A DNA stretch of 64,000 nucleotides, taken from assembly GCF_031769215.1 (NCBI RefSeq), contig NW_026782254.1, positions 62,001-126,000 of the forward strand, written 5' to 3'. This DNA is from Ylistrum balloti. Lineage: Eukaryota. Positions 16,668 to 37,832 of the stretch are shown here, piece after piece; within the stretch, counting starts at the first letter, position 1; every line of letters begins with the position of its first letter. The position numbers were made by a program, and so were the translations under genes. The notes under the pieces were generated by a model. The model did no database searches and was not told where the DNA came from. It was given only the letters and a program-made list of their open reading frames with translations.

Positions 16668-18179
16668 CGTGTTTGTTTTGCATCACGTACAAAGCTAACA
16701 TACTTTTCAATGAAAGCTTCTCTGTTTATACAAAAGAGCTGGTCTAAATGAGTAATATAGACGAATATTGTTCTTGAAGGCTTCTAACAATGCACTCGGT
16801 CATGAAAAACCTCACTATCCCCAAAGAGAGAGAAAAACAAATAAAAAACAAAACATACCACGAACACACAAAAAGAAAACGAAAAAGGGTTTCTAGCAGT
16901 TTTACAATGTATGTGTATCTCCTCTACATGTATTCTTTAAACTGAAGTATGACTAGAAATCCTTTGTAACAAGATCGAATTATCATATGTTATATCTGGT
17001 ATTAGCATTGACAGTACTTTGTATACCCAAAGTCACGTGATTTGCATTAAAGTGGTCATACATACCCTTAACTATAGTTAATGACACTGTGGACATTACA
17101 GACGTTTGGGAGTTGCCTTTGTAATTATATATAGATAGGTTTTATCTTGTAATTGTTCATCTTTATCTGTCTGTATAATGTTTATAGAATCATTCAATAA
17201 AACATGATTTGACGTCATAAACGCTCTATTGATTATTGAAAGCAGAGGGAATCATAAATTGTATGACGGGAGAACGAGACAGATAACGTCAAACCTTTTT
17301 GAAAGATGTTATTTACTTATGGTACGGTTATTTGTTTAACGAGGATGACCAAAGATCTTGAAAATTTATCTATATGGTAATTTTCAAATAATTTCTAAAA
17401 CAATGCATTTTTGAAACAATGAATTACTGTGTAAAACACATTTTTGCTTAAAACTTTCATCAACATTAGGTTAAAGTTGAACGTTAAAGAAACTACAGTT
17501 TTTGCGATAAGATAGTTTCAGTAGATTGCCCTTAAGTGGGCCTCATTATCATGTGACTGCCATGAGGTAATGGACGCTATTATAGTAGATATTATTATAC
17601 AGGAAGTTATTAGATATTTCATAGATCGTTCAATATTTCCTGTGTAATGTAATCCATCTTTCACAAATGAAATCGTATAAACACATTGAATAAATCTGGC
17701 GCCATTTTTCCTTCAATGAATACTGAATTGTTTTACAATAATTTTGAAATGATATACTCACCACGAATCTTGGTGGTTGTTGACCAATGGCAGAGTATTG
17801 TTTACTTCTGTTGTGAAGGAATCTATTGCTTGGCGTCGTTCTATGGCTGTTCTGTGTTACTTATGTCCCTTTTACGTCAATACCTGGTGACATTATAGGC
17901 AAAAGTATATCTGGTCCACTATAGATATCGAGAGAACGACTCATAACAAGTGGTAGTCAACAAATATTTACGTCATAGTATTGGCCTTCCTGGTACAACT
18001 TATTTTTAACATATACCGATGACAACGATATATGTATATATATATAATCATAAGGACTATATTTAGATCTCAGTATGTTAATGCCTTCCAAGAAGTGGCT
18101 ATCTTTGTATGTTAAATAAAATTGAAAAATGTCTGTTCTGAGCGATGGCGATTTCCAATTTATACAAATTTATTATCAT

Positions 18180-20022
18180 CTTTATGTAGATCTATGAGGT
18201 GATGAAATGGCTACATTTATAACAATCTATCATGGATTTGAAATGAAAAAAATGAAGTTGTACAGTATTTTTTGTTTCGATTTAAGTAAGTCACTTCCTC
18301 AGTATTAACAATTTGATATGTAAATCTATGAGGTCGGTGTGATAAAATGGCTACATTTATAACAATTTGGTATGTAGATCTATGAGGTCGGTGTGATAAA
18401 ATGGCTACATTTATAGCAATTTGGTATGTAGATCTATGAGGCCGTGGTGATAAAATGACTCTACATTTATAACAATTTGGTATGTAGATCTATGAGGTCG
18501 TGGTGATAAAGTTACTACATTTATAACAATTTAGTATTTAGATCTATGAGGTCGGTGTGATAAAATGACTCTACATTTATAACAATTTGGTATGTAGATC
18601 TATGAGGTCGTGGTGATAAAATGACTCTACATTTATAACAATTTGGTATGTAGATCTATGTGGTCGTGGTGATCAAATGGCTACATTTATAACAATTTGG
18701 TTTGTAGATCTATGAGGTCGTGGTGATAAAATGACTACATTTATAACAATTTGGTAGGTAGATCTATGAGTTCGTGGTGATCAAATGGCTACATTTATAA
18801 CAATTTGGTATGTAGATCTATGAGGTGATAAAATGACTCTACATTTATAACAATTTGGTATGTAGATCTATGTGGTCGTGGTGATCAAATGGCTACATTT
18901 ATAGCAATTTGGTTTGTAGATCTATGAGGTCGTGGTGATAAAATGACTCTACATTTATAACAATTTGGTATGTAGCTACATTTATAACAATTTGGAATGT
19001 AGATCTTTATGGTCGGTGTGATAAAATGACTACATTTATAACAATTTGGTATGTAGATCTATGAGGTCGGGATGATAAAATGACTCTACATTGATAACTA
19101 ATTGGTATGTAGATCTATGAGGTCGGTGTGATAAAATGACTACATTTATAACAATTTGGTATGTAGATCTATGAGGCCGTGGTGATAAAATGACTACATT
19201 TATAACAATTTGGTATGTAGATCTATGAGGTCGGTGTGATAAAATGGCTACATTTATAACAATTTGGTATGTAGATCTATGAGGTCGGTGTGATAAAATG
19301 GCTACATTTATAAAAAAATTGGTATGTAGATCTATGAGGTCGTGGTGACAAAATGGCTACATTTATAACAATTTGGGATGTAGATCTATGAGGTCGTGGT
19401 GACAAAATGGCTACATTTATAGAAATTTGGTATGTAGATCTATGAGGCCGTGGTGACAAAATGACTACATTTATAACAATTTGGTATGTAGAACTATGAG
19501 GTCGTGGTGATGAAATGACTACATTTATAACAATTTGGTATGTAGAACTATGAGGTCGTGGTGATGAAATGACTACATTTATAACAATTTGGTATGTAGA
19601 TCTATGAGGTCGTGGTGATAAAATGGCTACATTTATAACTAATTGGTATGTAGATCTATGTGGTCGTGGTGACAAAATGACTACATTTATAACAATTTGG
19701 AATGTAGATCTATATGGTCGGTGTGATAAAATGGCTACATTTATAACAATTTGGTATGTAGATCTATGAGGTCATGGTGATAAAATGACAACATTTATAA
19801 CAATTTGGTATGTAGATCTATGAGGGCGGGATGATAAAATGACTCTACATTGATAACTAATTGGTATGTAGATCTATGAGGCCGTGGTGATAAAATGACA
19901 ACATTTATAACAATTTGGTATGTAGATCTATGAGGTCGTGGTGATAAAATGACTACATTTATAACAATTTTGTATGTAGATCTATGAGGCCGTGGTGACA
20001 AAATGACTCTACATTGATAATA
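18180..20022. repeat. 54-bp minisatellite, array 2 (about 32 units), with an embedded 74-bp unique segment
   Basis: Same unit as 15817-16667, with 56-bp (gactcta) and 48-bp variants. Segment 18226-18299 is identical to 15743-15816. Confidence 0.95.
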
Positions 20023-20329
20023 TGTAATATTTTGCTCTACAATGCCTAAACATCAGTTTCTATCGGAAGTTATTATTCATCTGTTTGTCTTTTCATTATC
20101 ATATAGATTATTTTGCAAAATGCACGTTTTCCGGATACGTATATATACACAGAGAATAAGGTAAAGCTGGTCGGCTAACATGCTAATGAACGAATACACG
20201 ATAATGCCCTTGACATTTATTCAATGTATCACACATAACACCATATAATTTCTTTACAGTACATCTGTGTTATATATGTAACAGGTTGCCTGACTCGTGT
20301 GTTTTTTAAAGGTTATAGTGTGTCTATAT

Positions 20330-23150
20330 CGTAAATAAATTGGTTGTGTGATTCGTTTGTATTTATGAAAGTTACAGGGAGCTTGACTCGTGTGTGTTAT
20401 ATAGATAACAGACTGCCTGAATCGTGTGTGTTATAATTGGTAACATGATGCCTGAACAGGGTGCCTCTAGCGTGTGTGTTTTATAGGTAACAGGGTGCCT
20501 AAAGCGTGTGTGTTATATTGGTAACATGGTGCCTAAAGCGTGTGTGTTATATTGGTAACATGGTGCCTAAAGCGTGTGTGTTTTGTAGGTAACAAGGTGC
20601 TTAAAGCGTGTGTGTTATATAGGAAACAGGATGCCTAAAGCGTGTGTGTTTTATAGGTAACATTGTGCCTAAAGCGTGTGTGTTATATAGGTAACAGGGT
20701 GCCTAAAGCGTGTGAGTTATATATATGTGTTGTGAAGGTTATAGGGTGTATGAGTCGTGTGTGTTGTGAAGGTTATAAGGTGTCTTAGTCATATGTGTTG
20801 TGAAGGTTATAGGGTGTCTGAGTCGTGTGTGGTGTGGACGTTATAGGGTGTCTGAGTCATATGTGTTGTGATGGTTATAAGGGGTCTGAGTCATATGTGT
20901 TGTGAAGGTTATAAGGTGTCTGAGTCGTGTGTGTTGTAAAAGTTATAAGATATCTGAGTCATAAGTGTTGTGAAGGTTATAGAGTGTCTGAGTAGTGTGT
21001 GTTGTTAAGGTGAAAGGATGTCTGAGTCGTGTGTGTTGTTAAGGTTATATGTCTGAGTCATGTGTGTTATGAAGGTTATAAGGTGTATGAGTCGGGTGTG
21101 TTGTGAATGAAGGTTATGGGGTATCTGAGTCTTTTTTTTTGAAAGTTATAAGGTGTCTGAGTCATGTGTGTTGTGAAGGTTATAGGGTGTCTGAGTCGGT
21201 TGTGCTGTGAATGAAGGTTATAGAGTGTCTGAGTCGGGAGTGTTCTGAAGGTTATAGAGTGTCTGAGTCATATGTGTTGTGAAAGTTATAAGGTGTCTGA
21301 GTCATATGTGTTGAGAAAGTTATGGAGTGTCTAAGTCGTGTGTGTTGTGAAGGTGAAAGGGTGTCGGAGTCATGTGTGTTGTGTAGGTTATAGGGTGTCG
21401 GAGTCGTGTGCGTTGTGAAAATTATAGGGTGTCGGAGTCGTGTGTGTTGTGAAGGTAATAGGGTGTCTGAGTCATATTTGTTGTGAAGGTTTTAAGGTGT
21501 CTGAGTCAAATGTGTTGTGAATGTTATAGGGTATCTGAGTCGTGTGTGTTTTGAAAGCGTGTGTTTTATATAAAAGGTAAAAGGGTGTCTGAAGCGTGTT
21601 TGTTTTATAGGTAACAGGGTGCCTAGAGCGCGTGTTATATAGGTTACAGGGTGCCAGTCTCACGTGTGTTATATATGTGTTGTGAAGATTATAGGGTGTC
21701 TGAGTCATATGTGTTGTGAAGGTTATATGGTGTCTGAGTCATATGTGTTGTGAAGGTTATATGGTGTCTGAGTCGTGTGTGTTGTGAAGGTTATAGGGTG
21801 TCTGAGTCGTGTTTGGTGTGGAGGTTATAGGGTGTCTGAGTTGTTTGTGTTGTGACATTTATAAGGTGTCGGAGTCGGGTGTGTTGTGAAGGAAGGTTAT
21901 AGGGTGTCTGAGTCGGGAGTGTTGTGAAGGTTATTGAGTGTCTGAGTAGTGTGTGATGTGAAGGTTTTAGGGTGTCTGAGTAGTGTGTGTTGTGAAGGTT
22001 ATAGGGTGTCTGAGTCGTGTGTGTTGTGAAAGTTATAGGGCGTCTGAGTCGGGTGTGTTGTGAAGGTTAAAGAGTGTTAGAGTAGTGTTTGTTGTGAAGG
22101 TTATAGAGTGTCTAAGTCGTGTGTATTGTGAAGGTGAAAGGGTGTTGGAGTCGTGTGTGTTGTGAAGGTTATAGGGTGTCTAAGTCGTGTGTGTTGTGAA
22201 GGTTATAGGGTATCTGATTCATATATGTTGTGAAGGTGAAAGGGTGTCGGAGTCGTGTGTGTTGTGAAGGTTATAGGGTGTCGGAGTCGTGTGTGTTGTG
22301 AAGGTTATAGAGTGTCTGAGTCGTGTGTATTATGAAAGTTATAGGGTGTGTGAGCAGCAGTGTGTGGTGAAGGTTTTAGGGTGTGTGAGCAGTGTGTTGT
22401 GTAGGTTATAGGTTTTCTGAGTCGTGTGTATTGTGAAGGTGATTATAGGGTGTCTGAGTGGGGTGTGTTGTAATGGTTATAGGGTGTTTGAGTCGTGTGT
22501 GTTGTGAAGGTAATAGGGTGTCTGAGTCGTGTGTGTTGTAATGGTTATAGGGTGTCGGAGTCGTGTGTGTTGTGAAGGTTATAGGGTGTCTGAGTCGGGA
22601 GTGTTGTGAAGGTTATTGAGTGTCTGAGTAGTGTGTGATGTGAAGGTTTTAGGGTGTCTGAGTAGTGTGTGTTGTGAAGGTTATAGGGTGTCTGAGTCGG
22701 GTGTGTTGTGAAGGTTAAAGAGTGTTAGAGTAGTGTTGGTTGTGAAGGTTATAGAGTGTCTAAGTCGTGTGTATTGTGAAGGTGAAAGGGTGTTGGAGTC
22801 GTGTGTGTTGTGAAGGTAATAGGGTGTCCGAGTCGTGTGTATTGTGAAAGTTATAGGGTGTCTGAGTCGTGTGTGTTGTAATGGTTATAGGGTGTCGGAG
22901 TCGTGTGTGTTGTGAAGGTTATAGGGTGTCGGAGTCGTGTGTGTTGTGAAGGTTATAGAGTGTCTGAGTCGTGTGTGTTATGAAGGTTATAGGGTGTGTG
23001 AGCAGCAGTGTGTGGTGAAGGTTTTAGGGTGTGTGAGCAGTGTGTTGTGTAGGTTATAGGTTTTCTGAGTCGTGTGTATTGTGAAGGTGGTTATAGGGTG
23101 TCTGAGTCGTGTGTGTTGTAATGGTTATGTAGTTTCTGAGTCATGTGTAT
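20330..23150. repeat. 34-bp G/T-rich satellite with two unit subtypes
   Basis: Main unit ggttatagggtgtctgagtcgtgtgtgttgtgaa; variant gtgcctaaagcgtgtgtgttatataggtaacagg at about 20440-20710 and 21560-21680. Confidence 0.93.
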
Positions 23151-23299
23151 TTAAGCCCAGTCAGAATCAAGCCAAATTAAACAGCCTGTAGACTACATTC
23201 TAAGAGATAACATAAACAATGAATGAGATATTTATCTCTTCTTGTATCAGCTGTTTCTCTTCTCGTCAATAGATTAATTCATTTACTTTATTGATTTTT

Positions 23300-23337
<38 letters not shown>

Positions 23338-23439
23338 AAATATCTCAACATAAATAAATAGACAATTCACAATAGGTAATTCAATATCGTCACCCTTATC
23401 ATACAGTTTGGTGGAAAGTTGTAAATAATAATCTCATAG

Positions 23440-23504
23440 AAGGAAAAGATGGGGAAAGTCGTCTAAGGCTGAAGAGTTTGTCGTGTCCTAGATTTCTAAT
23501 ACAG
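23440..23504 (+). other. Candidate 5' non-coding exon of the LRR-GPCR gene (start position approximate)
   Basis: Strong donor acag|gtgagt at 23504/23505, upstream of the signal-peptide exon. No transcript evidence. Confidence 0.3.
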
Positions 23505-24383
23505 GTGAGTATACACAATGTTTTGTAATAAGTTAGTTATATAAAGAAAATGTATTATCAATATATATCTCAGAGTAATTTAGAATGATTTTTTCAAGGT
23601 CTGTGTTACCTGTTTTCATACGCTCATGAATATATTCAGACTTGCATGAAGACAAAAAAAGTCCGTCAACTAAGGGGCACAGTTAGTTCCCAGAGGTATG
23701 CGAACAGTCTGTTAAAAAGTCTTGCCGAAAAACTCGACGAAATTCATCATTCTCCAGCATATTTCTTTTTTGTTTTTGAACATTTTTTTGACAAAACATG
23801 TTTCAGTGTAGTTATGTATATGTTATTGCAACCAGCGGAGAAATGCTCATATGGAAGAAATTATGTTTAGACTTTTCAGGATTGGTTAAAAAACACACTT
23901 AGAAATTCCTTAAAATCCACATTTCATTTTCAGTAAGACATAAAAAGTAAGAAGCTGCATTAAAGTTATGAGTGATCAATTAGACGAGCCAGCAATAAAA
24001 CGCTGTATAGGTTATGTTGAAGTTTAGGTGTAATATGTGATTATTGAATGTGTTAAAGTTTTATGCTGTGCTATATTATTAGGGACAGGATCTCCCTCAA
24101 ACTTTCGACCAATATCAATATTTATGTAGGGATACTCAAATAACTTTCTGTAACTTTCTCCACCTCACAAGTCGTGTTATAAGTTACCAAGACAGTATCA
24201 GCGGGTGATTTAAACACCAGTAAAACAGAAATATAAGCTACTGTCCAGATTATCGAATCATAGAGAGATATTAGATAACGAAGCTAGTAAATTTTAGGAA
24301 AACACTATGCTAAGCCTATGTGAGAACGTGACAGCGAAACATTGGTGTCATATACAAATAAATTAGGCAGAGCAGGCTGCCGC

Positions 24384-25936
24384 CAGGACAGTTGTTCTGT
24401 TACTCCGCTCCGGTCTCCAGGACAGTAGTTCTGTTACATCGCTCCAGTATCCAGGACAGTTAATCTGTTGCACCGCTCCAGTCTCCAGGACAGTAAATCT
24501 GTTACACAACTCCAGTCTCCAGGACAGTAGATCTGTTACATTGTTCCAGTCTCCAAGACAGTAGATCTGTTACATTGTTCCAGTCTCCAGGACAGTAGAT
24601 CTGTTACATTGTTCCAGTCTCCAGGACAGTAGATCTGTTACATTGTTCCAGACCTTAGGACAGTAGATCTGTTACATTGTTCCAGTCTCCAGGACAGCAG
24701 ATCTGTTACACCTCTCCAGTCTCCAGGACAGCAAATCTGTTACATTGTTCCAGTCTCCAGGACAGTAGATCTGTTACATTGTTCCAGTCTCCAGGACAGT
24801 AGATCTGTTACATTGTTCCAGTCTCCAGGACAGTAGTTCTGTTACATTGTTCCAGTCTCCAGGACAGTAGATCTGTTACATTGTTCCAGTCTCCAGGACA
24901 GCAGATCTGTTACATTGTTCCAGTCTCCAAGACAGTAAATCTGTTACATTGTTCCAGTCTCCAGGACAGTAGATCTGTTACATTGTTCCAGTCTCCAGGA
25001 CAGTAGTTCTGTTACATTGTTCCAGTCTCCAGGACAGTAGTTCTGTTACATTGTTCCAGTCTCCAGGACAGTAGATCTGTTACATTGTTCCAGTCTCCAG
25101 GACAGTAGATCTGTTACATTGTTCCAGTCTCCAGGACAGTAGATCTGTTACATTGTTCCAGTCTCCAGGACAGTAGATCTGTTACATTGTTCCAGTCTCC
25201 AGGACAGTAGATCTGTTACATTGTTCCAGTCTCAGGACAGTAAATCTGTTACAGTCTCCAGGACAGTCTGTTATCTGTTACATTGTTCCAGTCTCCAGGA
25301 CAGTAGATCTGTTACATTGTTCCAGTCTCCAGGACAGTAGATCTGTTACATTGTTCCAGTCTCCAGGACAGTAGATCTGTTACATTGTTCCAGTCTCCAG
25401 GACAGTAGTTCTGTTACATTGTTCCAGTCTCCAGGACAGTAGATCTGTTACATTGTTCCAGTCTCCAGGACAGTAGATCTGTTACATTGTTCCAGTCTCC
25501 AGGACAGTAGATCTGTTACATTGTTCCAGTCTCCAGGACAGTAGTTCTGTTACATTGTTCCAGTCTCCAGGACAGTAAATCTGTTACATTGTTCCAGTCT
25601 CCAGGACAGTAGATCTGTTACATTGTTCCAGTCTCCAGGACAGTAGATCTGTTACATTGTTCCAGTCTCCAGGACAGTAGATCTGTTACATTGTTCCAGT
25701 CTCCAGGACAGTAGATCTGTTACATTGTTCCAGTCTCCAGGACAGTAGATCTGTTACATTGTTCCAGTCTCCAGGACAGTAAATCTGTTACATTGTTCCA
25801 GTCTCCAGGACAGCAGATCTGTTACACCGCTCCAGTCTCCAGGACAGTAGATCTGTTACATTGTTCCAGTCTCCAGGACAGTAGATCTGTTACATTGTTC
25901 CAGTCTCAAGGACAGTAGATCTGTTACATTGTTCCA
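24384..25936. repeat. 34-bp highly homogeneous satellite (about 45 units)
   Basis: Unit ccagtctccaggacagtagatctgttacattgtt; edge units are more diverged. Confidence 0.96.
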
Positions 25937-25962: not shown

Positions 25963-26170
25963 ATGTTTAATACATTATCAAGGTGTGTTTTCTTAATAAT
26001 GATTTGTACATTTAGTGTGAACTTAAGGATAACTGGGGACATTTCAGAGGAAAGTGTAAAAACTCAGGATAGGTCTAAAGCAGAAACGATCCATTTTGAT
26101 AGTTCCGTTAAGAAACTTCAAAGAAGAGGTCCACGTTTGAAGAGACACAAGTCAAAAGGATGTTTGAAAG
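25963..26170 (+). CDS. Predicted first coding exon of the LRR-GPCR (signal peptide plus basic pro-region)
   Basis: MFNTLSRCVFLIMICTFSVNLRITG is signal-peptide-like, followed by ...KKLQRRGPRLKRHKSKGCLK. Strong donor aaag|gtaagt, phase 1, compatible with the next exon. Confidence 0.55.
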
Positions 26171-26498
26171 GTAAGTTTTTTTTAAAAAAAAAAAAAATAA
26201 ATAAGTAGGCTCTAATTTTAATACAATTAAGTTTCCCCTTACAACGTTTAGATTATCCTATATATGGTTACAAATGCACGGGAGTGAGGAAAAACTATAA
26301 CAATGAAAAAGACTAAATAATATCTGCTACTCCAATCACCCCAATCGTTTTTCCATAGACATCTAGTGTCAGAGAATTTACGCGGATGTTATCATCAAAG
26401 ACTATTGTTTTCGCCTGACGCAGACAGTCCTTTTATCACCAGACACCCATCCAGATACTGTCTGTCGATGTCTTCCTAGTCATACACGACCCTTTCTG

Positions 26499-28650
26499 TT
26501 GTCTCTAGGTAATCGACACCCTGTGACCCTAGATGTTGTCTCACGGGACACCCGTCATCACATAACACTTACTGTTGTCTCCTTAGACACCCGTCATCAC
26601 ATACCATTGACTGTTGTTTCCTTAGACTCTCGTCATCACATGACATTGACTGTTGTCTCCTTAGACACCCGTCATCACATATTATTGACTGTTGTCTCCG
26701 TAGACACCCGTCATCAGGTAACATTGACTGTTGTCTCCTTAGACACCCGTCAGCACATAACACTGACTGTTGTCTCCTTAGACACTCGTCATCACATATT
26801 ATTGACTGTTGTCTCCGTAGACACCCGTCATCAGGTAACATTGACTGTTGTCTCCTTAGACACCCGTCATCACATACCATTGACTGTTGTCTCCTTAGAC
26901 ACCCGTCATCACATACCATTGACTGTTGTTTCCTTAGACTCTCGTCATCACATACCATTGACTGTTGTTTACTTAGACTCTCGTCATCACATGACATTGA
27001 TTGTTGTCTCCTTAGACACCCGTCATCACGTAACACTGACTGTTGTCTCCTTAGACACCCGTCATCACATACCATTGACTGTTGTCTCCTTAGACACCCG
27101 TCATCACATACCATTGACTGTTGTCTCCTTAGACACCCGTCATCACGTAACATTGACTGTTGTCTCCTTAGACACCCGTCATCACATAACACTGACTGTT
27201 GTCTCCTTACATACCCGTCATCACATAACATTGACTGTTGTCTCCTTAGACACCCGTCATCACATAACACTGACTGTTATCTCCTTAGACACTCGTCATC
27301 ACATATTATTGACTGTTGTCTCCTTAGACACCCGTCATCACATAACACTGACTGTTGTCTCCTTACATACCCGTCATCACGTAACATTGACTGTTGTCTC
27401 CTTAGACACCCGTCATCACATAACACTGACTGTTATCTCCGTAGACACTCGTCATCACATATTATTGACTGTTGTCTCCGTAGACACCCGTCATCACGTA
27501 ACATTGACTGTTGTCTCCGTAGACACCCGTCATCACATACCATTGACTGTTGTTTCCTTAGACTCTCGTTATCACATGCCATTGACTGTTGTCTCCTTAG
27601 ACACCCGTCATCACATAACACTTATTGTTGTCTCCTTTGAAACCCGTCATCACATAACATTGACTGTTGTGTCCTTAGACACCCGTCATCACATAACATT
27701 TTCTGTTGTCTCCTTAGACACCCGTCATCATATGACATTGACTGTTGTCTCCTTAGACACCCGTCATCACATACCATTGACTGTTGTTTCCTTAGACACC
27801 CGTCATCTCATAACATAGACTGTTGTCTCCTTAGACTCTCGTCATCACATGCCATTGACTGTTGTCTCCGTAGACACCCGTCATCACATAACACTGACTG
27901 TTGTCTCCTTAGACACCCGTCATCACGTAACATTGACTGTTGTCTCCTTAGACACCCGTCATCACATAACACTTACTGTTGTCTCCTTAGACACCCGTCA
28001 TCACATAACACTGACTGTTGTCTCCTTTGAAACCCGTCATCACATAACATTGACTGTTGTGTCCTTAGACACCCGTCATCACATAACATTTTCTGTTGTC
28101 TCCTTAGACACCCGTCATCACATGACATTGACTGTTGTCTCCTTAGACTCTCGTCATCACATGACATTGACTGTTGTCTCCTTAGACTCTCGTCATCACA
28201 TGCCATTGACTGTTGTCTCCGTAGACACGTGTCATCACATAACACTGACTGTTGTCTCCTTAGACACCCGTCATCACATAACACTGACTGTTGTCTCCTT
28301 ACATACCCGTCATCACGTAACACTGACTGTTGTCTCCTTAGACACCCGTCATCACGTAACATTGACTGTTGTTTCCTTAGACTCTCGTCTGTTGTCTCCG
28401 TAGACACCCGTCATCATTGACTGTTGTCTCCTTAGACACCCGTCATCACGTAACATTGACTGTTGTTTCCTTAGACTCTCGTCATCACATGCCATTGACT
28501 GTTGTCTCCGTAGACACCCGTCATCACGTAACATTGACTGTTGTCTCCTTAGACACCCGTCATCACATATTATTGACTGTTGTCTCCGTAGACACCCGTC
28601 ATCACGTAACATTGACTGTTGTCTCCTTAGACCCTCGTCATCACATGCCA
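26499..28650. repeat. 39-bp minisatellite (about 55 units), intronic
   Basis: Unit cgtcatcacataacattgactgttgtctccttagacacc; gives 13-aa periodic ORFs on both strands. Confidence 0.96.
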
Positions 28651-28949
28651 TGGTGAACGTGTAGTTAAGTTACTAATTAATGAGATATTCAGAAGATTTT
28701 GTCACTTTTCCCGTCTTTTTGAAAATTATGTTTATATTTATCATCTTTTCCATTTGATATATATTTTTGTATTTCATATGATTATCTTATTGAGCCTTCA
28801 AGACCAGTTAAGGATAGTGGTTTTGGAAAGCATCTTGTTTTGTAAACACAACTAATAATAAGAATAATATGATTATCTACATTGAATCGGATTCAATTTT
28901 CCTCATGTTTACCAAATATAAATGTCTCTTTATTAAAAGAAAAAGGGAT

Positions 28950-30245
28950 AAATAATGAATCTAACAAGGTTTCAAAGTTTGTTATCAGGTTTTGTACCTG
29001 AATGCATTCCCATAAAGCATGTTCAATGGTTTCTATTTCTGACTTACAAAAATAACAATAGGTATTATCTACTAATCCTGCTCTATGTAGATATAAGTTA
29101 GTTGTTAAGATGTGCTGATTAATTCTGTTTTGGAACCACTGTAATTTTGTATTTTTTGTTACTTAAAAAGGCATTTTATAAATATTTCTCCAGATATTAT
29201 CAGTAAAGTCAACCCACCTCTTTCTACCTGTTGACACAGTATCATCTTTACTAAATAAACTATAAAAATCTTGTCCCTTTCTTGTGTTTTAAAAAAAATA
29301 TTTGTATATTGCTGGGTATAAAAGGATAACTTACATTTTCTAACTCTTGTTCTTGTACCTGAGACAGGTGTCCATTAATAGCAGAAATCAGACCTTGATA
29401 CTGAAGAAAATTTGTTGCAATGTTAAAAACTTGTCTGATTTCTTGTAAAGTATAATGGAGTTATCTCCCTTGTATTGATTTTCACTTACTTTGACTAATT
29501 TGTTCCATGTATTAAATACATCTTTCCAAAATAGGTTTTTGCTTATTTTTTCACATTTTAAATTATAATCACTTCCAAATTTTGCTAAAATGTCTATATT
29601 TATATAAGTTTTTAAAATTTCCTGCCATTTACCTGATGTAATGCACAACCTTCTTATCCATGTTCATTTCAAAGAATCTATAAGGACTTTAAATGTATCA
29701 TTTTGAACCCACCATCTGTATAATTCTTTATTACTATATCCCTTTTAGTTTAATCTACCTTGCTTTTCCATAAGAAGTTGAATAATTCTGTGTTAAGGTT
29801 TTTAAGAAAATACTCATCTGGTTTTGGTATTGCAATCAATAGGTGATTTAATTACGAAATAAGCAATGATTTTATGATATGAATTCTACCTATTGGTGTA
29901 GTAATTCTCCAAGACCAAGTATTTTAACTAGTTTTTTTTTTTATCATAATTCAGTCTAGGGATGAGGTGTAAATCTACATGAAAGTTGATGCCAAGAACA
30001 TTAAATGCTTTAATTCCCCACTTTGATTTCCATTCTGGATATAGAATTTCCTCTCTATATTTTTTACTCCCTATCCATATAGCCGGAGATTTTGATATGA
30101 TAATTTTCAAACCTGAGATTTTTACGAAATTATTTAGTTCATTTAATGCTTCTTTCAGAGAAATTTAAGTTCCATCTAAAATTAAAGAGGTATCACCAGC
30201 ATACTGAGATATTAAAATGGGACAATTATTTATACCGATACCCTT
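28950..30245 (-). mobile_element. 5'-truncated degraded L1/Tx1-type LINE (RT C-half to C-terminal Cys region), antisense in GPCR intron
   Basis: Minus strand reads ILISQYAGDTSLILDG (decayed YADD), KSPAIWIGS, TPIGRIHIIKSLLIS, DGGFKMI, FWKDVFNTW and ETIEHALWEC. Confidence 0.85.
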
Positions 30246-30449
30246 TACCTGTTATTTCTTATTGCTAGTACCTCTGGATCTAGACTTGTAGTGTAGTTTC
30301 ACTGAGTAAGGTTGCCCAAGCACTTAAACACAGGGCTACTTATTTTTTTTATATCTCGGTTTTCTCTTATTAATTGCTTTTCCTATCCAAAGTTATTTTT
30401 GTTGATATTCCTGTTTATGGACGAAACCGAATTCTTGATTCGGTTTTAG

Positions 30450-30560
30450 GAGAACATCTAAGTACAGAAGAGCAAACTTGTCGGCAAAACACATCCCGTC
30501 AACTTGTGGAATATAGCTGTTGTATAAAATGTCAAGAGAGACCTACAGGAGTCGGCTGTG
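30450..30560 (+). CDS. Predicted symmetric phase-1 Cys-rich exon of the LRR-GPCR
   Basis: ggttttag| 111 nt |gtaagt, open frame GEHLSTEEQTCRQNTSRQLVEYSCCIKCQERPTGVGC; phase 1 at both ends fits both neighbouring exons. Confidence 0.6.
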
Positions 30561-33212
30561 GTAAGTTTTACTGTTACATAGTAATGATTCTGTCGTAACG
30601 TTACCTATCATTTCGTGATGGTCATAGCAAACAAGCAAATACAAATTTAGAATCCAATACAGCAGAGTCGAATAATGAAGCTAACTACACTATACAGTTG
30701 AGCTGTTTTCATAGGACTCAACGGTGATGCAAAGGGTTTCAACTTTGAGATCTAGAATGTGACTAAAGAAACCAACTCACACATTTTGTAATATTCATCT
30801 GATAATTTTGAAATATACATTTGTATGTTCTGAAATGAGCCACTAGAATGAATTTTAATTCTTATTTGGGAACATGACATTGCTTACACAGTCGGCATTA
30901 TCAATGAAGACACTTACTCTTTAGGAACACCTGGTCTTATCACTTACGATTCCACTTAGATTTTGAATTATGATTGTGTTGACACGTCCTCAACATCTTT
31001 GAATTTATAAAAACTATTTTTGTGAATACCACACTGAAAAATATTTTTGAAACTATATGAAAATAATGGTATCTACTTATGCTCTGATATTTTCGATAAC
31101 TCACTATTTTTCAGAATATCAAATGACATTTCAGTATATATTAACATTATACCAACAAGTACCTTATGAAAATAATATTGGGTAGAAACGTTATCACGAT
31201 GAAGTTTAAGTGGTCAAACAGAAATTGAATATGAAAAAAAAAAGACAAAATGAAACATAATCAGAATTACATACTCAAAAATATGGCACTCAACAACAAG
31301 CCATAAATGAAAATATGTCAGGAACGTTTTCTCTTCGAGACAAAAATAGGTTTAGACGACAAATTTAAACAAATACGTTGGTTTGTGAACACTTTCTTCA
31401 CTTGCTGCCCCTGAAACTTATCAGGGTTTGATGCAACTCTTAATGTAATAACGGCGCTGTATTACAATAAACGTTGCAACAGCTACGCTAAATATAATAA
31501 AGTTATGATTATAATTAGATTAATTATTAGAATGCCATCAAACCTTGCATGTGGTTAAAATGCCAGTTACCTCACTGTTTGTATGCATACACATTATGAT
31601 GATCCCCGTCAGCCGTGTCATATCAAAGACGTTTAAAATGGCACTTGAAGCTTCCCCCCATTTAAACATTAATACTGCAAGGAGCAAGGAACTAAACGGC
31701 CTGGAGTCAGTATAACGGTGTGGGTAGTGGGTTGGGTACATGTATTGTGTCTGCCATGCATGCCATGTACCTATGATATTATCTGCAAATGACTCAAGCT
31801 GTTGCGCGGACGTTAATAGACAATACAACACAACTTTCAAGGTCACGGAATCAAAGGGTTATTGCTTTGTGTTGCTCCTTTGTTATGTTGTTGCTAATAT
31901 ATAGTTGCATTGATACGACCTTTCGAAAATAGCTTCTTTTGTAGTCAAAATGCATCACAATATTTCTTAACACCAACATATTGTGTTTGAAAAAATATTC
32001 GCTTTTTTGGAAGGTCACAGGTTTTGGCTGTACCTTTTAGATTAAGAATAAGAATTTACACGTGATCAAATTGTATATAATCATCTTTTTAATGATCAAC
32101 ACTGCATAACATAACATCGCAATATTGTATTCATGGAAACCTAGTCTCCTCACAGATCACAGTTGAAGATACAATGTAATCTGGCTAAATAATAAAACAA
32201 ATTTTACACAAACCATTCATGATCAACAAGATAGATGTGATTTTAAACAACTTAGAGGCTTAGAGGCATGTGCCAGTACAACATCCATATGCTTTTAAGG
32301 CAACAAGAACTTCATCGTTATATGGTGAAGGTCTGTAAGTGAGTAATAGTATCACAGTACAAACATCGATTAATTGTACCAGCCCTACATCATACATAAC
32401 GCTACACAATTGAAAATGTGCACATGTAAAATTGTTACAATCTTCATATTTGCTAAATTTGTACTTTTGCTCTTAATCGTGCTTGGCCTAGAGTTTTTTA
32501 CTTACTTTATCTTACGTTTACTATGTTAAAAAGGCCTGGAAACCAAATGCAAATGCAAAACTACACATGGCGATGACCACTTAAAGGCCTACCACTTTTT
32601 GTTGTATAGTAAGCGATTGCATGCACTACATTTCTCCTAGTCCATAAAGGGGCATTGCTCCATGAAAGTATTTGAAGCGAAAGCTAATCACAATTAATTG
32701 TAATGCAATAAGTATTACATTTGTGGTAGCAGTTAGCAATACATGTCCTGCCGTTAATATAATAATTTCCTAAAGACTCGAAAATGATACTACACACGGA
32801 TCTGTCATTAACCGTTATCAAACTTGTTCGAATAGTCCAAAACTTACATGTTTACTATTCACTGTTTGGCATTCCAAATATTTGATCTCGAGCAATGCTG
32901 ACGAGAAATTTATATCTGAAATGTGCACATACACTGCACCAAAATTAGTACTGGTGTCATCAATGTTTATTATTACAAGTAATAAGGGTAGCGATGCAGT
33001 CCCTACCGTTAATGTAATAATTATTACAGTCCCTACTGCTAAGCGTAATGGTTGCAACGCTTAATGTAACTATTATTACATTAGCGTCGTTATTAAATTA
33101 AGAGTTGCGTCAGGGTTTAGATTATAACAATTCTTGAAACTGTAGAAGTAAATAATAATGAAAGTATTGTTCATATACAGCGTTGTAGCAGGATACTATT
33201 TGTTTGTTGCAG

Positions 33213-35435
33213 AGCCATACAGCTGTATTGGAATCCATGCTTGCTCGTCCCTACAGGAACCATCTCGACGTCTTGATCTCCATAACAGTCATATTTCCGC
33301 CCTTCCTTCTAATGTTTTCGATGGACTTGTTGATCTTGTTTTTCTTGACCTTTCCTACAATAATATTTCAATTTTACGTCAAGATGTTTTCAATGGACTA
33401 TTAAGTCTTACTCATATAAATCTGTCCTATAGTAACATTAGCTCTCTCTCCTATAAGGCGTTCAGGGGATTGACGAACCTTACTCATCTTAACCTGAACA
33501 GAAATAATATCGGCTTTCTTCCTCAAAATGTGTTCAAAGGACTGTTGAATCTTGTTGTTCTCAACTTGTATGATAATAAGATAGCTGATCTTCCATATAA
33601 AGTGTTTGATGATGTTTCCTCACTAAATTATGTCAGCCTCGGTTTGAACAACATAACAACCATTCGATCCATGCTGTTCAGTGAACTATCTCAACTGACT
33701 TATCTCGACTTGTCAAGAAATAAGCTAACAATTCTGAATCGAAATGCGTTCAGAGGGCTGTCGAGTCTGTTTCATCTCTACCTGCATGACAACAAGTTAG
33801 CGGATCTTCATCATGAGGTGTTTGATGAGCTATCCTCTCTAATTAGTCTCGCCTTGGACAATAACAAGTTAACTGATCTCCCAGATTATATATTTAACAA
33901 GCTGACGAATTTGAGATATTTCAATTTGGTAAGAAATAAACTAGTCAATATTACTTTCAATGTGTCGCCCAAACTCATAAAACTGTATTTTACACACAAT
34001 AATATACATATTCTTCCTTTTAACATATTTCGCGACCTTTCTGAACTTACTGTCCTTCACCTTGCTTATAATAACTTAGTAACTTTCCCATCTGATATGT
34101 TCAATGGTTTGTCTGCACTGAGATATCTTTATCTTAACAACAATGGTATCACGGTTCTGCCACACAATGTCTTCAGAGAACTACCTAATCTAACTTATCT
34201 CGACTTGTCCGATAATAAGATAGTGATAATACCAATTAATCTATTTATGGGACTGTCTGATCTTACTTTCCTACACATGCACCATAACAAAATCCCGAAG
34301 CTGCCCTACGGTGTATTTTCTAGAATGGGTGTAGATGGCAAACGATATAACTGGGACAATAAGTCCACAGTTGAATCTGCTCCGCCTTATAACATTCAAG
34401 AACTGGACATCTCCTATAATAGATTGACACATTTACCACGTCTACCGGATAACCTTTCACATCTAAACATCATCGGTAACAATATAGATGTGACAGAACG
34501 TATGTTTGAGGGTTTGGATAATCTGAAGATGTTGTTCACTGATATCCCCTTTATGTGTTGTGTTAAACCACCTTCAGTTGATGACAATAATTGCTTTAAA
34601 ACAAAGTATTCATTATGGCAATGCACTTTTTATCCTGGTCGTTGTAAATCAGAAAATGATGCGATATCATCTTGTTTTGCCCTGATAGGTTCGACTTTAC
34701 TAAGAGTTTGTCTCTGGATAATAGGAATGTGTTCTTTAATTGGAAACTTAGCCGTAATAGTGTATAGACTTCACATCGACAAAGATAATATTACAAAAAA
34801 CTATTCGCTCTTCACTGTGAATTTAGCCATGTCTGATTTACTTATGGGTGTTTATCTATTCATAATAGGAGTTATTGATGTTTATTACGATGGTGTATAC
34901 GCCTGGAACAACAATAGATGGAGAAACAGTGTTTTGTGTACTGCAGCAGGTATCTTGTCGAGTGTGTCAAGTGAGATGTCGACATTCCTGATATTAATGG
35001 TTACAATAGACAGATTAATTGCCATCATGTTTCCTCTGTCCCGTCTCTCTCGGTGGAGAAATTCCTGGAAACTCTCATTACTTGTGTTAGTTTCCTTATG
35101 GATAGTTTCAATCATTCTTGCAACCATCCCTATTGTAGCTAGTCAGTCTTACTTCAAAGGGGAATTCTACTCTCAGTCGAGTGTTTGTCTTGGCCTTCCT
35201 CTCACAGCAGAGCAGCGACCAGGCACTGAGTATTCATTTGCTGTATTTGTATGCCTCAACAGCGCCGTGTTTACCGTAATTGTCGTAGGTCAAATTTGTA
35301 TCTGGAAAGGCATGAGGGAGAGTCGACGACGCATTTCATCATCACAGAATCGAGAACGAGAGACGGCTGTTGCAAGGACTCTTTTCTTCGTGGTAGCGAC
35401 AGACTTTTGTTGTTGGTTTCCCATTGGTGTAATGG
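33213..35435 (+). CDS. LRR-containing rhodopsin-class GPCR (type C LGR; RXFP/GRL101-like), large exon: about 17 LRRs, hinge, TM1-TM6
   Basis: Canonical LxxLxLxxNxI repeats; hinge PFMCCVKP...AISSCFALIG; TM2 NLAMSDLLMGVYL; TM3 LCTAAGILSSVSSEMS...TIDR; FYSQSSVCLGLP; TM6 TDFCCWFPIG. Acceptor tttgtttgttgcag ends at 33212 (phase 1); donor g|gtacgt. The in-frame ATG at 33158 is an alternative start. Confidence 0.93.
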
Positions 35436-35691
35436 GTACGTTTGTGAGCTTTTCATTAAATAGTAAAACCTCCGCTTAGAAAGGGGCAGGTAATAATCAG
35501 TGCATTTGTGCAAACTTTGGTGGACAAGATATGCCAGAAACCTTTAACAGATCTAGCTCATCATTACAGCAGTTCCGGAGTATACTCCTGAGTTTATTTG
35601 TCATCTGAAACAGTTGAATGTGAAAGCTCAACCAGTTTGGAAATATGGATATTGTGTACAAGGTGTAGCATTAACCTCTGGAGAGATTTCA

Positions 35692-36380
35692 TATTCATAC
35701 CACCATGCTGTGGTCACTTGTCGAGGTTAATGTCCACCATATTCACACCACCATGCTGTGGTCACTTGTCGAGGTTAATGTCCACCATATTCACACCACC
35801 ATGCTGTGGTCACTTGTCGAGGTTAATGTCCACCATATTCACACCACCATGCTGTGGTCACTTGTCGAGGTTAATGTCCACCATATTCACACCACCATGC
35901 GGTGGTCACTTGTCGAGGTTAATGTCCACCATATTCACACCACCATGCGGTGGTCACTTGTCGAGGTTAATGTCCACCATATTCACACCACCATGCGGTG
36001 GTCACTTGTCGAGGTTAATGTCCACCATATTCACACCACCATGCGGTGGTCACTTGTCGAGGTTAATGTCCACCATATTCACACCACCATGCGGTGGTCA
36101 CTTGTCGAGGTTAATGTCCACCATATTCACACCACCATGCTGTGGCCACTTGTCGATGCTGATGTCCACCATATTGAGGGTAATGTCCACCATATTCACA
36201 CCACCATGTGGTCACTTGTCGAGGTTAATGTCCACCATATTCACACCACCATGCTGTGGTCACTTGTCGAGGTTAATGTCCACCATATTCACACCACCAT
36301 GCTGTGGTAACTTGTCGATGCTGATGTCCACCATATTCACACCACCATGCTGTGGTCACTTGTCGAGGTTAATGTCCACC
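35692..36380. repeat. 48-bp minisatellite (about 14 units) in the GPCR intron
   Basis: Unit caccatgctgtggtcacttgtcgaggttaatgtccaccatattcacac; lies between donor 35436 and acceptor 36687. Confidence 0.95.
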
Positions 36381-36687
36381 ATTGGCTGGTTTCGAAATGA
36401 TCGTGTAAAAGATATGGACTCTTCACTAGGTTTTGTTGATGATAAAAAAAAATCAGATAAAGGAGATAAGCTTTTCAAAGGTCCTGTTCTTTGTTTTACA
36501 TCACATCCAATAAAAGTCCATATTATGTCTTTACCAGATATATGATGCGGTAACAGATTCTTACAATGCCAATATCCAGGATTCTTGTTTCAAACAAGAC
36601 ATTTCGTAAATGTCAAGAAATGTCTTTTCTTGTCCATGACAAAGTTGATATTTAGTGTTACAATTAAATGCTATCGATTTATTTCAG

Positions 36688-36821
36688 GAGTGGCATCAAA
36701 GTGTGGGGTAGAAATCCCGAATGGAGTGTACGCCTGGGTGATGGTGTTCGTGTTGCCTATCAATGCCGCCATCAATCCGTTTCTGTACACTGCTACAGCT
36801 GTGTGGAGGAAACGACGAACG
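36688..36821 (+). CDS. LRR-GPCR exon encoding ECL3 and TM7
   Basis: tttcag|GVASKCGVEIPNGVYAWVMVFVLPINAAINPFLYT...RKRRT|gtaagt; contains the NPxxY motif; phase 1 fits the upstream donor. Confidence 0.9.
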
Positions 36822-37083
36822 GTAAGTTGATATTGATATCACAGGTAACAGCATACGTAAGATTACATCCGTGTTGTTTTTTTTATTATACCAATTTTGA
36901 CGGAGGTCACTGTCTATTACGGAGCACTATGTCTTATGTTTTTACAAGGACTTCCGAGTTAATATTTATTTTCTGTGAAGTTTGCCTTTGTTTTACTAGT
37001 TTTAGGTCTTTCGGAGCTATTTCGATATATGCTCGGTTTTGGCGTTGCATGAATTAATATTGACATTTTTCTTTTTCTTGAAG

Positions 37084-37638
37084 ATCTTAATAAAGATAAC
37101 ATCATCGACACGACCAAAGCACCTGCCGTCTGCAAGTATCGATATTCAGACAACGCCAGTCGGCAGAGATATTGTGGCCAGTACTGATATTCAGACAACG
37201 CCAGTCGGCAGAGATGTTGTGACCAGTACTGATATTCAGACAACGTCAGTCGGTAGTGATGTTGTGGCCAGTACTGATATTCAGACGTCAGTCGGCAGAG
37301 ATGTTGTGGCCAGTACTGATATTCAGACAACGTCAGTCGGCGGAGATGTTGTGGCCAGTACTGATAGTCAGACAACGCCAGTCGGCAGAGATGTTGTGAC
37401 CAGTACTGATATTCAGACAACGTCAGTCGGCAGAGATGTTGTGGCCAGTACTGATATTCAGACGTCAGTCGGCAGAGATGTTGTGGCCAGTACTGATATC
37501 CAGACAACGCCAGTCGGTAGAGATGTTGTGGCCAGTACTGATAGTCAGACAACGCCAGTCGGCAGAGATGTTGTGACCAGGACTGATATTCAGACAACGC
37601 CAGTCGGCAGAGATGTTGTGACCAGTACTGATATATAG
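37084..37638 (+). CDS. Candidate terminal exon: Ser/Thr-rich repetitive cytoplasmic tail
   Basis: Pyrimidine-rich acceptor tttttctttttcttgaag, phase 0, matching the TM7 exon donor; open frame ILIKITSSTRPKHLPSA followed by 11 copies of STDIQTT(P/S)VGRDVV(A/T). Confidence 0.55.
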   Translation: MLIKITSSTRPKHLPSASIDIQTTPVGRDIVASTDIQTTPVGRDVVTSTDIQTTSVGSDVVASTDIQTSVGRDVVASTDIQTTSVGGDVVASTDSQTTPVGRDVVTSTDIQTTSVGRDVVASTDIQTSVGRDVVASTDIQTTPVGRDVVASTDSQTTPVGRDVVTRTDIQTTPVGRDVVTSTDI

Positions 37639-37832
37639 ACAACGTCAGTCGGCAGAGATGTTGTGGCCAGTACTGATATTCAGACAACATCAATCGGCAG
37701 AGATGTTGTGGCCAGTACCGATATTCAAACAACGCCATTCGGCGGAGATGCTGTGACCAGTACTGATATTCAGACAACGCCAGTCGGCTGAGATGCTGTG
37801 ACCAGTACTGATATTCACACATCGCCAGTCGA
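37135..37832 (+). repeat. 45-bp tandem repeat (about 15 units, with 42-bp variants)
   Basis: Unit agtactgatattcagacaacgccagtcggcagagatgttgtggcc; the length variants seen are 3-nt deletions. Confidence 0.95.

What the first reader, a model, noticed from the sequence alone, without database searches (positions are those of the whole stretch)
25963..35435. Reconstructed LRR-GPCR with no LDLa module but a putative furin-cleavable pro-region and Cys-rich cap
Seen: three exons with canonical splice signals all join in phase 1 (25963-26170, 30450-30560, 33213-35435). They give signal peptide - ...KKLQRRGPRLKR|HKSKGCLK - GEHLSTEEQTCRQNTSRQLVEYSCCIKCQERPTGVGC - EPYSCIGIHAC - LRRs. Established: type C LGRs (RXFP1/2, Lymnaea GRL101) normally carry N-terminal LDLa module(s), and in RXFP1 the LDLa/linker acts as a tethered agonist; R-X-K-R is the furin consensus. 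Inference: a cleaved pro-segment and a novel Cys-rich module replace the LDLa, possibly giving a protease-activated or tethered-ligand receptor architecture.
Basis: partly seen in the sequence, partly recalled or inferred. Interest (0 to 1): 0.72.

Follow-up and report, generated by a model that had tools for sequence, protein, structure and literature searches.

The report
Scallop LRR-GPCR with convertase-site cysteine cap
This scallop gene for an orphan relaxin-receptor-like GPCR really does have two small upstream exons that add a signal peptide, a conserved furin-type cleavage motif and an eight-cysteine cap in place of the usual LDLa module, an architecture shared only by a small group of scallop receptors and not yet tested in RNA or protein.

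Summary
Exons 25963-26170, 30450-30560 and 33213-35435 have canonical AG/GT signals and all join in phase 1. A fourth exon (36688-36830) carries TM7.

No RNA data could be found, so support is comparative.
- Five other loci in this genome (Ylistrum balloti) carry the exon-2 peptide, each next to an LRR-GPCR exon.
- NCBI models of paralogues in three scallop genera use the same three exons with the same junctions.
- A basic R/K-x-K-R motif lies exactly five residues before the first cysteine in all six members of the clade.
- All eight cap cysteines are kept.

A profile search of 1.84 billion proteins found the module only in Pectinidae.

- The gene has no LDLa, and no LDLa exon lies in the window.
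- The cysteine module did not replace the LDLa. Sister clades carry the module followed by a degenerate LDLa and an LRRNT.
- This clade later lost all but the first two LDLa-like cysteines.

Convertase cleavage is a well-founded inference. Tethered-agonist or protease-activated function is untested.

Rivals not excluded are a short form starting at ATG 33158, or a decaying young duplicate.

I rate it a new variant of a known kind, of moderate interest. The scan had already noted gene conversion among scallop LRR-GPCRs on other DNA; I see the same here.

The parts
25963..26170 (+). Exon 1: start codon, signal peptide (about residues 1-21), about 36-residue pro-region, basic motif, and the first cap cysteine (Cys67). 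Ends in phase 1.
   Evidence: Translation. Homologous open exon with the same ATG and donor in paralogues C902/C685: 83.7% nt identity against 57-58% in the flanks. Same exon end in the NCBI model P0002. Alignment A3.
26134..26145 (+). R-L-K-R (residues 58-61), a furin/proprotein-convertase consensus, five residues before the first cap cysteine.
   Evidence: Read from sequence. [RK]-x-K-R at the same 5-residue distance from the Cys in C902, C837, P0002, P0004 and P0124.
30450..30560 (+). Exon 2: core of the Cys-rich module (five cysteines, including the CC-x2-C motif). Phase 1 at both ends.
   Evidence: Translation. tblastn from P0004 at E 6e-6 and P0002 at E 2e-3 against the window. Own-genome matches. 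84.7% nt identity without gaps to C902, against 71-78% gapped flanks. Alignment A1.
33158..33212 (+). In-frame ATG plus 18 hydrophobic codons lying on the polypyrimidine tract and acceptor of intron 2. Possible alternative start of a short form.
   Evidence: ORF list. The same ATG is present in C902/C685 and an analogous one in C837, but none in C44. NCBI uses this start for paralogue P0001. 93% identity here is part of a conversion-like block and so is not informative.
33213..35435 (+). Exon 3: the last two cap cysteines (EPYSCIGIHAC, 33213-33244); LRRs (about 33266-34568); Cys-rich hinge (about 34540-34680); TM1-TM6 (7tm_1 from about 34742, with DRL and CWFP motifs).
   Evidence: Translation. 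Pfam LRR_8 E 4e-71 and 7tm_1 E 2e-21. Homologues. Alignment A4.
36688..36830 (+). Exon 4: TM7 (NPFLY) and a basic juxtamembrane stretch. Either stops at TGA 36828-36830 or uses the GTAAGT donor at 36822 to reach a repeat-encoded tail exon from 37084, as in NCBI model P0003.
   Evidence: Sequence. Homology to the last exon of P0001/P0002. P0003 sequence.

Best explanation
The window holds an intact member of a scallop-only (Pectinidae) clade of type-C-derived LRR-GPCRs, which NCBI names GRL101-like or relaxin-receptor-like. NCBI's model for this locus is truncated.

The gene has at least four coding exons.
- Exon 1 gives a signal peptide, a pro-region of about 36 residues, the motif RLKR, and the first cysteine five residues later.
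- Exon 2 gives five more cysteines.
- The large exon 3 starts with two cysteines, which are what is left of an LDLa-like module. It runs straight into about 17 LRRs, the hinge and TM1-6.
- Exon 4 gives TM7.

Shown here:
- the exon structure;
- its conservation in paralogues and in other scallop genera;
- the conserved basic motif and the eight-cysteine pattern;
- the absence of an LDLa and of an LRRNT;
- the restriction of the module to scallops.

Inferred:
- A furin-type proprotein convertase cuts after RLKR in the secretory pathway.
- The mature receptor then begins five residues before a disulphide-bonded cap of about 60 residues. This cap takes the place of the LRRNT at the N-terminal end of the LRR solenoid.

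Speculative:
- The cap has also taken over the activation role that the LDLa plus linker plays in RXFP1/2.
For: - Exon signals and phases are read directly from the sequence.
- Exon-2-like peptides occur at only six places in the genome. The five checked (C902, C685, C837 twice, C44) lie in the same order e1-e2-e3-e4 with an LRR-GPCR.
- NCBI models P0002 (C44) and P0121 (C837), Pecten maximus P0004, P0124 and P0126, and Mizuhopecten P0122 and P0123 splice the homologous exons at the same residues.
- C44 has no in-frame ATG upstream of exon 3, so there the upstream exons are obligatory.
- Against paralogue C902, exon 1 is 83.7% and exon 2 is 84.7% identical and free of frame-breaking gaps. Flanking intron is 57-78% identical with many gaps. 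The one indel is 15 nt, in frame.
- [RK]-x-K-R lies exactly 5 residues before the first Cys in six of six clade members, although the pro-regions are only 22-28% identical to the window's outside the close paralogue C902.
- Eight cysteines are conserved.
- The tree puts the LDLa-less clade as one group (97/94) nested among clades that keep a degenerate LDLa.
- The module profile finds 10 true hits, all Pectinidae, in 1.84 billion proteins.
- All exons are open. DRL, CWFP and NPFLY are present.
Against: - There is no RNA evidence. The only public run holding the gene is genomic DNA.
- NCBI's own model of this locus (P0003) starts at an internal Met. Its model of the closest paralogue (P0001) starts at the equivalent of ATG 33158 and ignores exons 1-2.
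- Against the young paralogue C902, dN/dS is 0.78 for exon 1 and 1.8 for exon 2 (2 synonymous against 14 non-synonymous changes). It is 0.65 for exon 3. Amino-acid constraint in this pair is therefore weak or absent.
- Cleavage at RLKR was not and cannot be tested here. His at P1' and Lys at P2' are not the commonest furin context (my own knowledge).
- AlphaFold gives the module only pLDDT 34-69, so no fold supports the 'cap' idea.
Confidence: 0.6

Rival explanations
1. Short-form gene. In this copy and its close paralogues, transcription starts in intron 2 and translation starts at ATG 33158. This gives its own signal-like peptide (MKVLFIYSVVAGYYLFVA) directly in front of EPYSC. Exons 1-2 are then relics, or are used only in a minor isoform.
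For: The open in-frame ATG with a hydrophobic stretch is kept in C902/C685, and an analogous one exists in C837. NCBI annotates P0001 (Y. balloti) and P0006 (Mizuhopecten) with this kind of start. dN/dS of exons 1-2 against C902 is near or above 1.
Against: The hydrophobic 'peptide' is the translation of a T-rich polypyrimidine tract plus acceptor, which is expected by composition. Its conservation is no better than that of the surrounding conversion-like block: 93% across 33127-33212, with homology ending abruptly at 33127. C44 has no such ATG, yet has the same exon 3. Exons 1-2 stay open with intact ATG, donor and acceptor sites, all cysteines and RLKR.
Confidence: 0.2
2. Decaying or silent young duplicate. 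The locus is one of several recent copies homogenised by gene conversion, and is not expressed or no longer under selection. The intact N-terminal architecture is then inherited, not functional here.
For: dN/dS is 0.65-1.8 against C902. Mosaic identity runs from 77% to 99% along exon 3, typical of conversion among copies (earlier finding s1-258794). No RNA holder was found. The NCBI model is truncated. The gene is embedded in minisatellites.
Against: There is no stop or frameshift in about 2.7 kb of coding sequence. All splice sites are canonical, and the GPCR motifs and all cap cysteines are intact. Absence of RNA runs reflects lack of data for this species, not silence.
Confidence: 0.12
3. 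The exons are real, but the basic motif is not a cleavage site. It would be a conserved basic patch (for example for glycosaminoglycan or ligand contact), and the N-terminal 40 residues would stay on the mature receptor.
For: The region is generally K/R-rich (KKLQRRGPRLKRHKSK). Two sister-clade proteins lack a full RxKR: P0007 has RPER and P0008 has none. No cleavage predictor or experiment is available.
Against: The spacing to the first Cys is a fixed 5 residues. The last two positions are strictly K-R in six diverged clade members, while the neighbouring residues vary freely. Signal peptide, pro-region, dibasic site and Cys-rich domain is the standard layout of convertase substrates (established knowledge).
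Confidence: 0.2

Closest known systems
Annotated scallop paralogues and orthologues: Y. balloti XP models P0002 ('relaxin receptor 2-like') and P0121; Pecten maximus P0004, P0124 and P0126 ('GRL101-like')
   Same: Same exon layout and junction residues. Same order of signal peptide, pro-region, [RK]xKR, x5, 8-Cys cap, LRRs and 7TM. They form one clade on the 7TM tree (97/94).
   Different: Exon 3 is 53% identical at the protein level to the C44 locus that encodes P0002, and P0004 is 61% identical over 70% of the query. The pro-region is only 22-28% identical. The window's own NCBI model (P0003) misses the whole ectodomain. None of these proteins has been studied experimentally, as far as the paper searches show.
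Sister scallop clades (P0007/P0009, P0011, P0013, P0008, P0010)
   Same: Same Cys module after the signal peptide and pro-region (alignment A1). RQKR or RRKR in P0011 and P0013. Same hinge and 7TM.
   Different: They keep a degenerate LDLa (third Cys replaced; Pfam E 2.2e-4 and 0.09, below cutoff) and a classical LRRNT (PCxxxCMC...) between the module and the LRRs. The window's clade has deleted both except for the first two cysteines.
Type C LGRs: RXFP1/RXFP2 and Drosophila Lgr3/4 (C1); Lymnaea GRL101 (C2)
   Same: LRR ectodomain plus rhodopsin-type 7TM. Vertebrate RXFP1 is the best non-scallop GPCR match among named proteins (28-31% identity over about 70%). It is sister to the scallop group in my small tree.
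   Different: An LDLa module is the distinguishing feature of type C (PMC11863921) and is essential for RXFP1 activation (PMC4837482, PMC4561518). Here it is absent. No pro-region or convertase site is described for those receptors. Here the LRRs and TM1-6 lie in one exon.
Protease-activated receptors (PAR1-4) and N-terminally processed GPCRs
   Same: The idea that cleavage in the N-terminal ectodomain creates a new N-terminus that matters for function.
   Different: From my own knowledge, not tested here: PARs are cut at the cell surface by regulated serine proteases, and the new N-terminus is a short linear tethered agonist. An RxKR site after a signal peptide predicts constitutive cutting in the Golgi, that is maturation rather than signalling. 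There is no sequence relationship.

Membership tests
Type C LGR (relaxin-receptor / GRL101 type) | Extracellular leucine-rich repeat domain | tested here: met
   Pfam LRR_8 E 4.1e-71, 8 stretches.
Type C LGR (relaxin-receptor / GRL101 type) | Rhodopsin-family 7TM most similar to RXFP/GRL101-type receptors | tested here: met
   7tm_1 E 1.9e-21. Named hits are GRL101-like proteins and relaxin receptors. The scallop group is sister to RXFP1 in a small tree without type A or B references, so the subtype placement is only partial.
Type C LGR (relaxin-receptor / GRL101 type) | One or more N-terminal LDLa modules (PMC11863921) | tested here: not met
   No Ldl_recept_a hit at E<=1 in exons 1, 2 or 3. 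No LDLa-like ORF in any frame of the 64-kb window. Only the first two Cys of the degenerate LDLa of the sister clades remain. It is best called type-C-derived, not a canonical member.
Pectinidae Cys-cap LGR clade (defined here) | e1-e2-e3 exon structure with phase-1 junctions at the same residues | tested here: met
Pectinidae Cys-cap LGR clade (defined here) | [RK]-x-K-R five residues before the first of eight conserved cysteines (1 in e1, 5 in e2, 2 in e3) | tested here: met
   Alignments A1, A3 and A4. Six of six clade members.
Pectinidae Cys-cap LGR clade (defined here) | Groups with the clade on a tree of the signalling half | tested here: met
   Clade of window, P0001, P0002, P0004, P0005 and P0006 with support 97/94.
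Proprotein-convertase (furin-type) substrate | R-X-K/R-R motif in a lumenal or extracellular segment after a signal peptide | tested here: met
   RLKR at residues 58-61, downstream of a hydrophobic N-terminal segment. No SignalP or ProP was available, so the signal peptide is judged by eye.
Proprotein-convertase (furin-type) substrate | Actual endoproteolysis at the motif | not testable with these tools
   Needs protein work.
Tethered-agonist / protease-activated GPCR | The N-terminal element is required for, or triggers, 7TM activation | not testable with these tools
   No functional data. The AlphaFold model of the module is of low confidence.

The most novel reading that the evidence does not exclude
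In this scallop clade, a convertase-matured eight-cysteine N-terminal cap has taken over the tethered-activator role that the LDLa plus linker plays in RXFP1/2. Removal of the pro-region would then license the receptor. The exon-3-skipping isoforms seen in other scallops (cap joined directly to TM7) would act as membrane-anchored decoys or modulators. That would be an independent solution to LGR activation, built from a lineage-specific module.
Probability: 0.12. Interest if true: 0.75.

Novelty: new variant of a known kind. Interest (0 to 1): 0.45.

Why it matters
Type C LGRs are defined by their LDLa module, and in RXFP1/2 that module is needed for activation. A clade that has discarded it, yet keeps intact LRRs and an intact 7TM core, raises the question of how such receptors are switched on. 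It also offers a natural experiment. The clade carries a conserved convertase site and a scallop-specific cysteine cap.

The finding also corrects the annotation of this locus and of its closest paralogues. NCBI's models there lack the ectodomain or the first two exons.

The practical weight is limited. The receptors are orphans, the family is fast-evolving and shuffled by gene conversion, and there is no expression or protein evidence yet.

Tried and rejected
**RNA evidence.** The look-up of sequencing runs (kind rna) on exon 3 returned one run of unknown kind. When its contigs were laid on window:29600-35590, they covered introns at the same depth as exons and showed no splice joints. It is therefore genomic DNA and says nothing about splicing.

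**Word-index protein searches.**
- The N-terminal 125 residues of P0002 found only P0002 itself.
- P0124 found only TM7 matches and no transcript-derived proteins.

**Pfam.** Scans of exon 1, exon 2 and the modules of P0002 and P0004 gave nothing.

**Structure.** AlphaFold2 on P0002:58-330 with an 8-row alignment gave LRRs above 90 pLDDT but the module at 34-69. I therefore ran no fold search, because the matches would be meaningless.

**ESM Atlas.** A feature search with P0011:66-175 gave LDLa clusters at 0.81, below the level that counts. This is a lead only.

**LDLa exon in the window.** A regular-expression scan and tblastn with scallop and vertebrate LDLa modules found only spurious hits in a minisatellite.

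**Literature.** Searches for GRL101 with scallop, for LGR, LDLa and mollusc, and for LGR, furin and propeptide found no description of this architecture. One search was malformed.

**'Partial' label on P0001.** I considered it as evidence for a missing 5' end and rejected this. The gene's 3' end lies about 470 bases from the contig's start (last exon at C902:475-615), so the label may instead refer to the 3' end.

**Resemblance of CIGIHAC to the LRRNT motif CIGLTINC of P0007.** Contiguous alignment with the preceding module favours homology to the first two LDLa-like cysteines. A deletion fusing the two motifs cannot be excluded.

**Joined model.** Every search, alignment and tree used single exons by reference or natural database proteins.
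Full report
**What is in the sequence**

- Exon 1 (25963-26170) opens with an ATG and ends at G|GTAAGT.
- Exon 2 (30450-30560) lies between ttttAG and G|GTAAGT.
- Exon 3 (33213-35435) follows ttgtttgttgcAG and is open for 740 codons.
- All three junctions are in phase 1. The split codons read Gly and Glu, so the quoted peptides are exact.
- Pfam finds LRR_8 (E 4e-71) and 7tm_1 (E 2e-21) in exon 3. It finds nothing in exons 1-2 and no LDLa.
Exon 4 (from 36688) encodes TM7 with NPFLY. It either stops at 36828-36830 or splices at 36822 into a minisatellite-encoded tail, as in NCBI's model.

The window is from the saucer scallop Ylistrum balloti. NCBI protein P0003 is 100% identical to this locus, but it starts at an internal Met in the hinge and so lacks the whole ectodomain.

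**Are exons 1 and 2 real?**

No RNA evidence could be obtained. The single public run that holds the gene turned out to be genomic: its contigs cover the introns and show no splice joints. The case therefore rests on comparison, and that case is strong.

- The 36-residue exon-2 peptide matches only five other places in the 648-Mb genome.
- At C902, C685, C837 (two tandem copies) and C44 it lies between an exon-1 homologue and a paralogous LRR-GPCR exon, in the same order and orientation.
- NCBI's models for C44 (P0002) and C837 (P0121, a fusion of the two tandem genes) splice these exons at exactly the homologous residues. The first junction follows the first cysteine and the second falls before E-P/V-Y/H-x-C. 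Pecten maximus P0004 and P0126 show the same N-terminus.
- In C44 there is no in-frame ATG upstream of exon 3, so there the upstream exons are indispensable.
- Against the closest paralogue (C902), exon 1 is 83.7% identical with a single in-frame 15-nt indel. Its flanks are 57-58% identical.
- Exon 2 is 84.7% identical without gaps. Its flanks are 71-78% identical and gapped. The ATG, both donors and the acceptor are kept.

**The conserved features**

Six members of the clade were compared: the window, C902/C685, C837, P0002, P0004 and P0124.
- The pro-regions are only 22-28% identical to the window's, apart from the close paralogue C902 at 67%.
- All six carry [RK]-x-K-R exactly five residues before the first cysteine.
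- All keep eight cysteines: one in exon 1, five in exon 2 (including CC-x2-C) and two at the start of exon 3.

**What the module is, and what happened to the LDLa**

A profile of the module was searched against 1.84 billion representative proteins. It found eleven proteins, of which ten are scallop LRR-GPCRs or their isoforms (Ylistrum, Mizuhopecten, Pecten) and one is a spurious insect repeat protein. The module is thus, as far as HMMER can see, confined to Pectinidae and to this receptor family.

In sister clades (P0007/P0009, P0011, P0008, P0010) the same module is followed by an LDLa-like segment and a classical LRRNT. P0013 carries that segment and LRRNT too, but lacks the exon-2-encoded core of the module.
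- The LDLa-like segment of P0013 scores E 2.2e-4 against Ldl_recept_a. This is just under Pfam's cutoff, and the third cysteine is replaced.
- That of P0011 scores E 0.09. An ESM Atlas feature search points the same way, but weakly.

On a tree of the signalling half:
- the scallop receptors form one group (94/99);
- the LDLa-less proteins form one clade (97/94) nested among the LDLa-bearing ones;
- that clade has members from all three genera.

So the module predates the loss. The LDLa and the LRRNT were deleted once, before these genera split, leaving only the first two LDLa-like cysteines (EPYSCIGIHAC in the window). No LDLa-coding ORF exists anywhere in the window. 'Replaces the LDLa' is not the history, though the cap may well have taken over the LRRNT's capping role.

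**How it probably works**

The layout is signal peptide, short pro-region, strictly conserved dibasic RxKR, then a cysteine-rich domain. This is the standard layout of proprotein-convertase substrates (established knowledge).

I therefore think the pro-region is removed in the secretory pathway and the mature receptor starts at His62, five residues before the cap. This step is inferred.

Whether the cap is merely structural or also acts on the 7TM domain is open. LDLa is essential for RXFP1 activation (PMC4837482, PMC4561518) and defines type C LGRs (PMC11863921). A functional clade without it would therefore need another activation route. I give the tethered-activator reading about 12%. A constitutive Golgi cleavage would not make the receptor 'protease-activated' in the PAR sense.

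**Caveats and rivals**

*Short form.*
- An in-frame ATG at 33158 gives a signal-like peptide in front of exon 3, and NCBI uses it for paralogue P0001.
- It is conserved in C902/C685, and an analogous ATG exists in C837.
- The hydrophobic stretch is simply the translated polypyrimidine tract.
- Its conservation is part of a 93-98% block that ends abruptly at 33127.
- A short isoform remains possible.

*Young duplicate.*
- Identity to C902 along exon 3 is mosaic: 96-99% blocks and a 77-79% block at 33727-34026.
- This fits gene conversion, which an earlier finding of this scan reported for other scallop LRR-GPCR pairs (s1-258794).
- dN/dS against C902 is 0.65 for exon 3, 0.78 for exon 1 and 1.8 for exon 2 on very few changes.
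- This young pair therefore shows little amino-acid constraint, and the copy could be drifting. Nothing in it is broken.

*Fold.* AlphaFold gave no confident fold for the module.

**Method note**

As required, the spliced model was never joined. All searches, alignments and the tree used single exons by reference or natural database proteins.

**Verdict**

The gene is a new variant of a known kind, an LGR clade with a lineage-specific, probably convertase-matured cysteine cap and a secondarily lost LDLa. It is of moderate interest until RNA and protein data exist.

Noticed in passing
window 24383-25936: A 34-bp minisatellite (about 46 copies, 93% matches) ends only 27 bases upstream of the start codon. 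Related repeats lie upstream of exon 1 in paralogues C902 and C685. The 5'UTR or promoter must lie in or across this array.
   Followed up: partly
window 26547-28651 and 35690-36382: Intron 1 holds a 39-bp minisatellite (about 53 copies) and intron 3 a 48-bp one (about 14 copies). Their long ORFs in several frames are repeat artefacts.
   Followed up: no
window 36822-37831: NCBI model P0003 splices from the GTAAGT at 36822 to an acceptor at 37083/37084 and reads a 45-bp minisatellite (37141-37831) as a Ser/Thr-rich C-terminal tail. The alternative is a stop at 36828-36830.
   Followed up: partly
window 33127-35571 against L007 (C902): Mosaic identity: 96-99% blocks alternate with a 77-79% block at 33727-34026. 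Identity falls to 75-82% just past the exon. Homology stops abruptly at 33127. This looks like gene conversion among paralogues.
   Followed up: partly
L007 7290-7775 against L008 3335-3820: Paralogues C902 and C685 are 100% identical over 486 bases around exon 1, yet they differ within exon 2 (74% against 71% to the window) and in exon 3. This could be a further conversion tract or an assembly redundancy.
   Followed up: no
proteins P0122, P0123 (Mizuhopecten), P0124 (Pecten maximus): NCBI isoforms X2/X3 join the N-terminal exons directly to the last exon and skip the big LRR-TM1-6 exon. The product would be signal peptide, pro-region, Cys module, TM7 and tail. The same skip would be in frame in the window (phase 1 to phase 1). 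It is not known whether these isoforms are real or annotation artefacts.
   Followed up: partly
protein P0121; loci L009, L010, L013 (C837): NCBI's 1604-residue 'uncharacterized protein' fuses two tandem LRR-GPCR genes into one model. It starts at the second Met, missing the signal peptide found upstream in the ORF (MAKLIIYFGIFIIFF...).
   Followed up: partly
protein P0013 against P0011: P0013 (Y. balloti) equals the P0011-type N-terminus minus the exon-2-encoded segment. Exon 2 has been lost or skipped in that gene or model, which leaves a six-cysteine LDLa-like unit right after the RRKR site.
   Followed up: no
window 29388-30110, minus strand: Short ORFs in intron 1 look like fragments of a non-LTR retrotransposon reverse transcriptase. 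They were not analysed.
   Followed up: no
window 18000-24000: There is a very strong GC skew (+0.35 to +0.55) upstream of the gene, suggesting G-rich repeats on the + strand. It was not examined.
   Followed up: no
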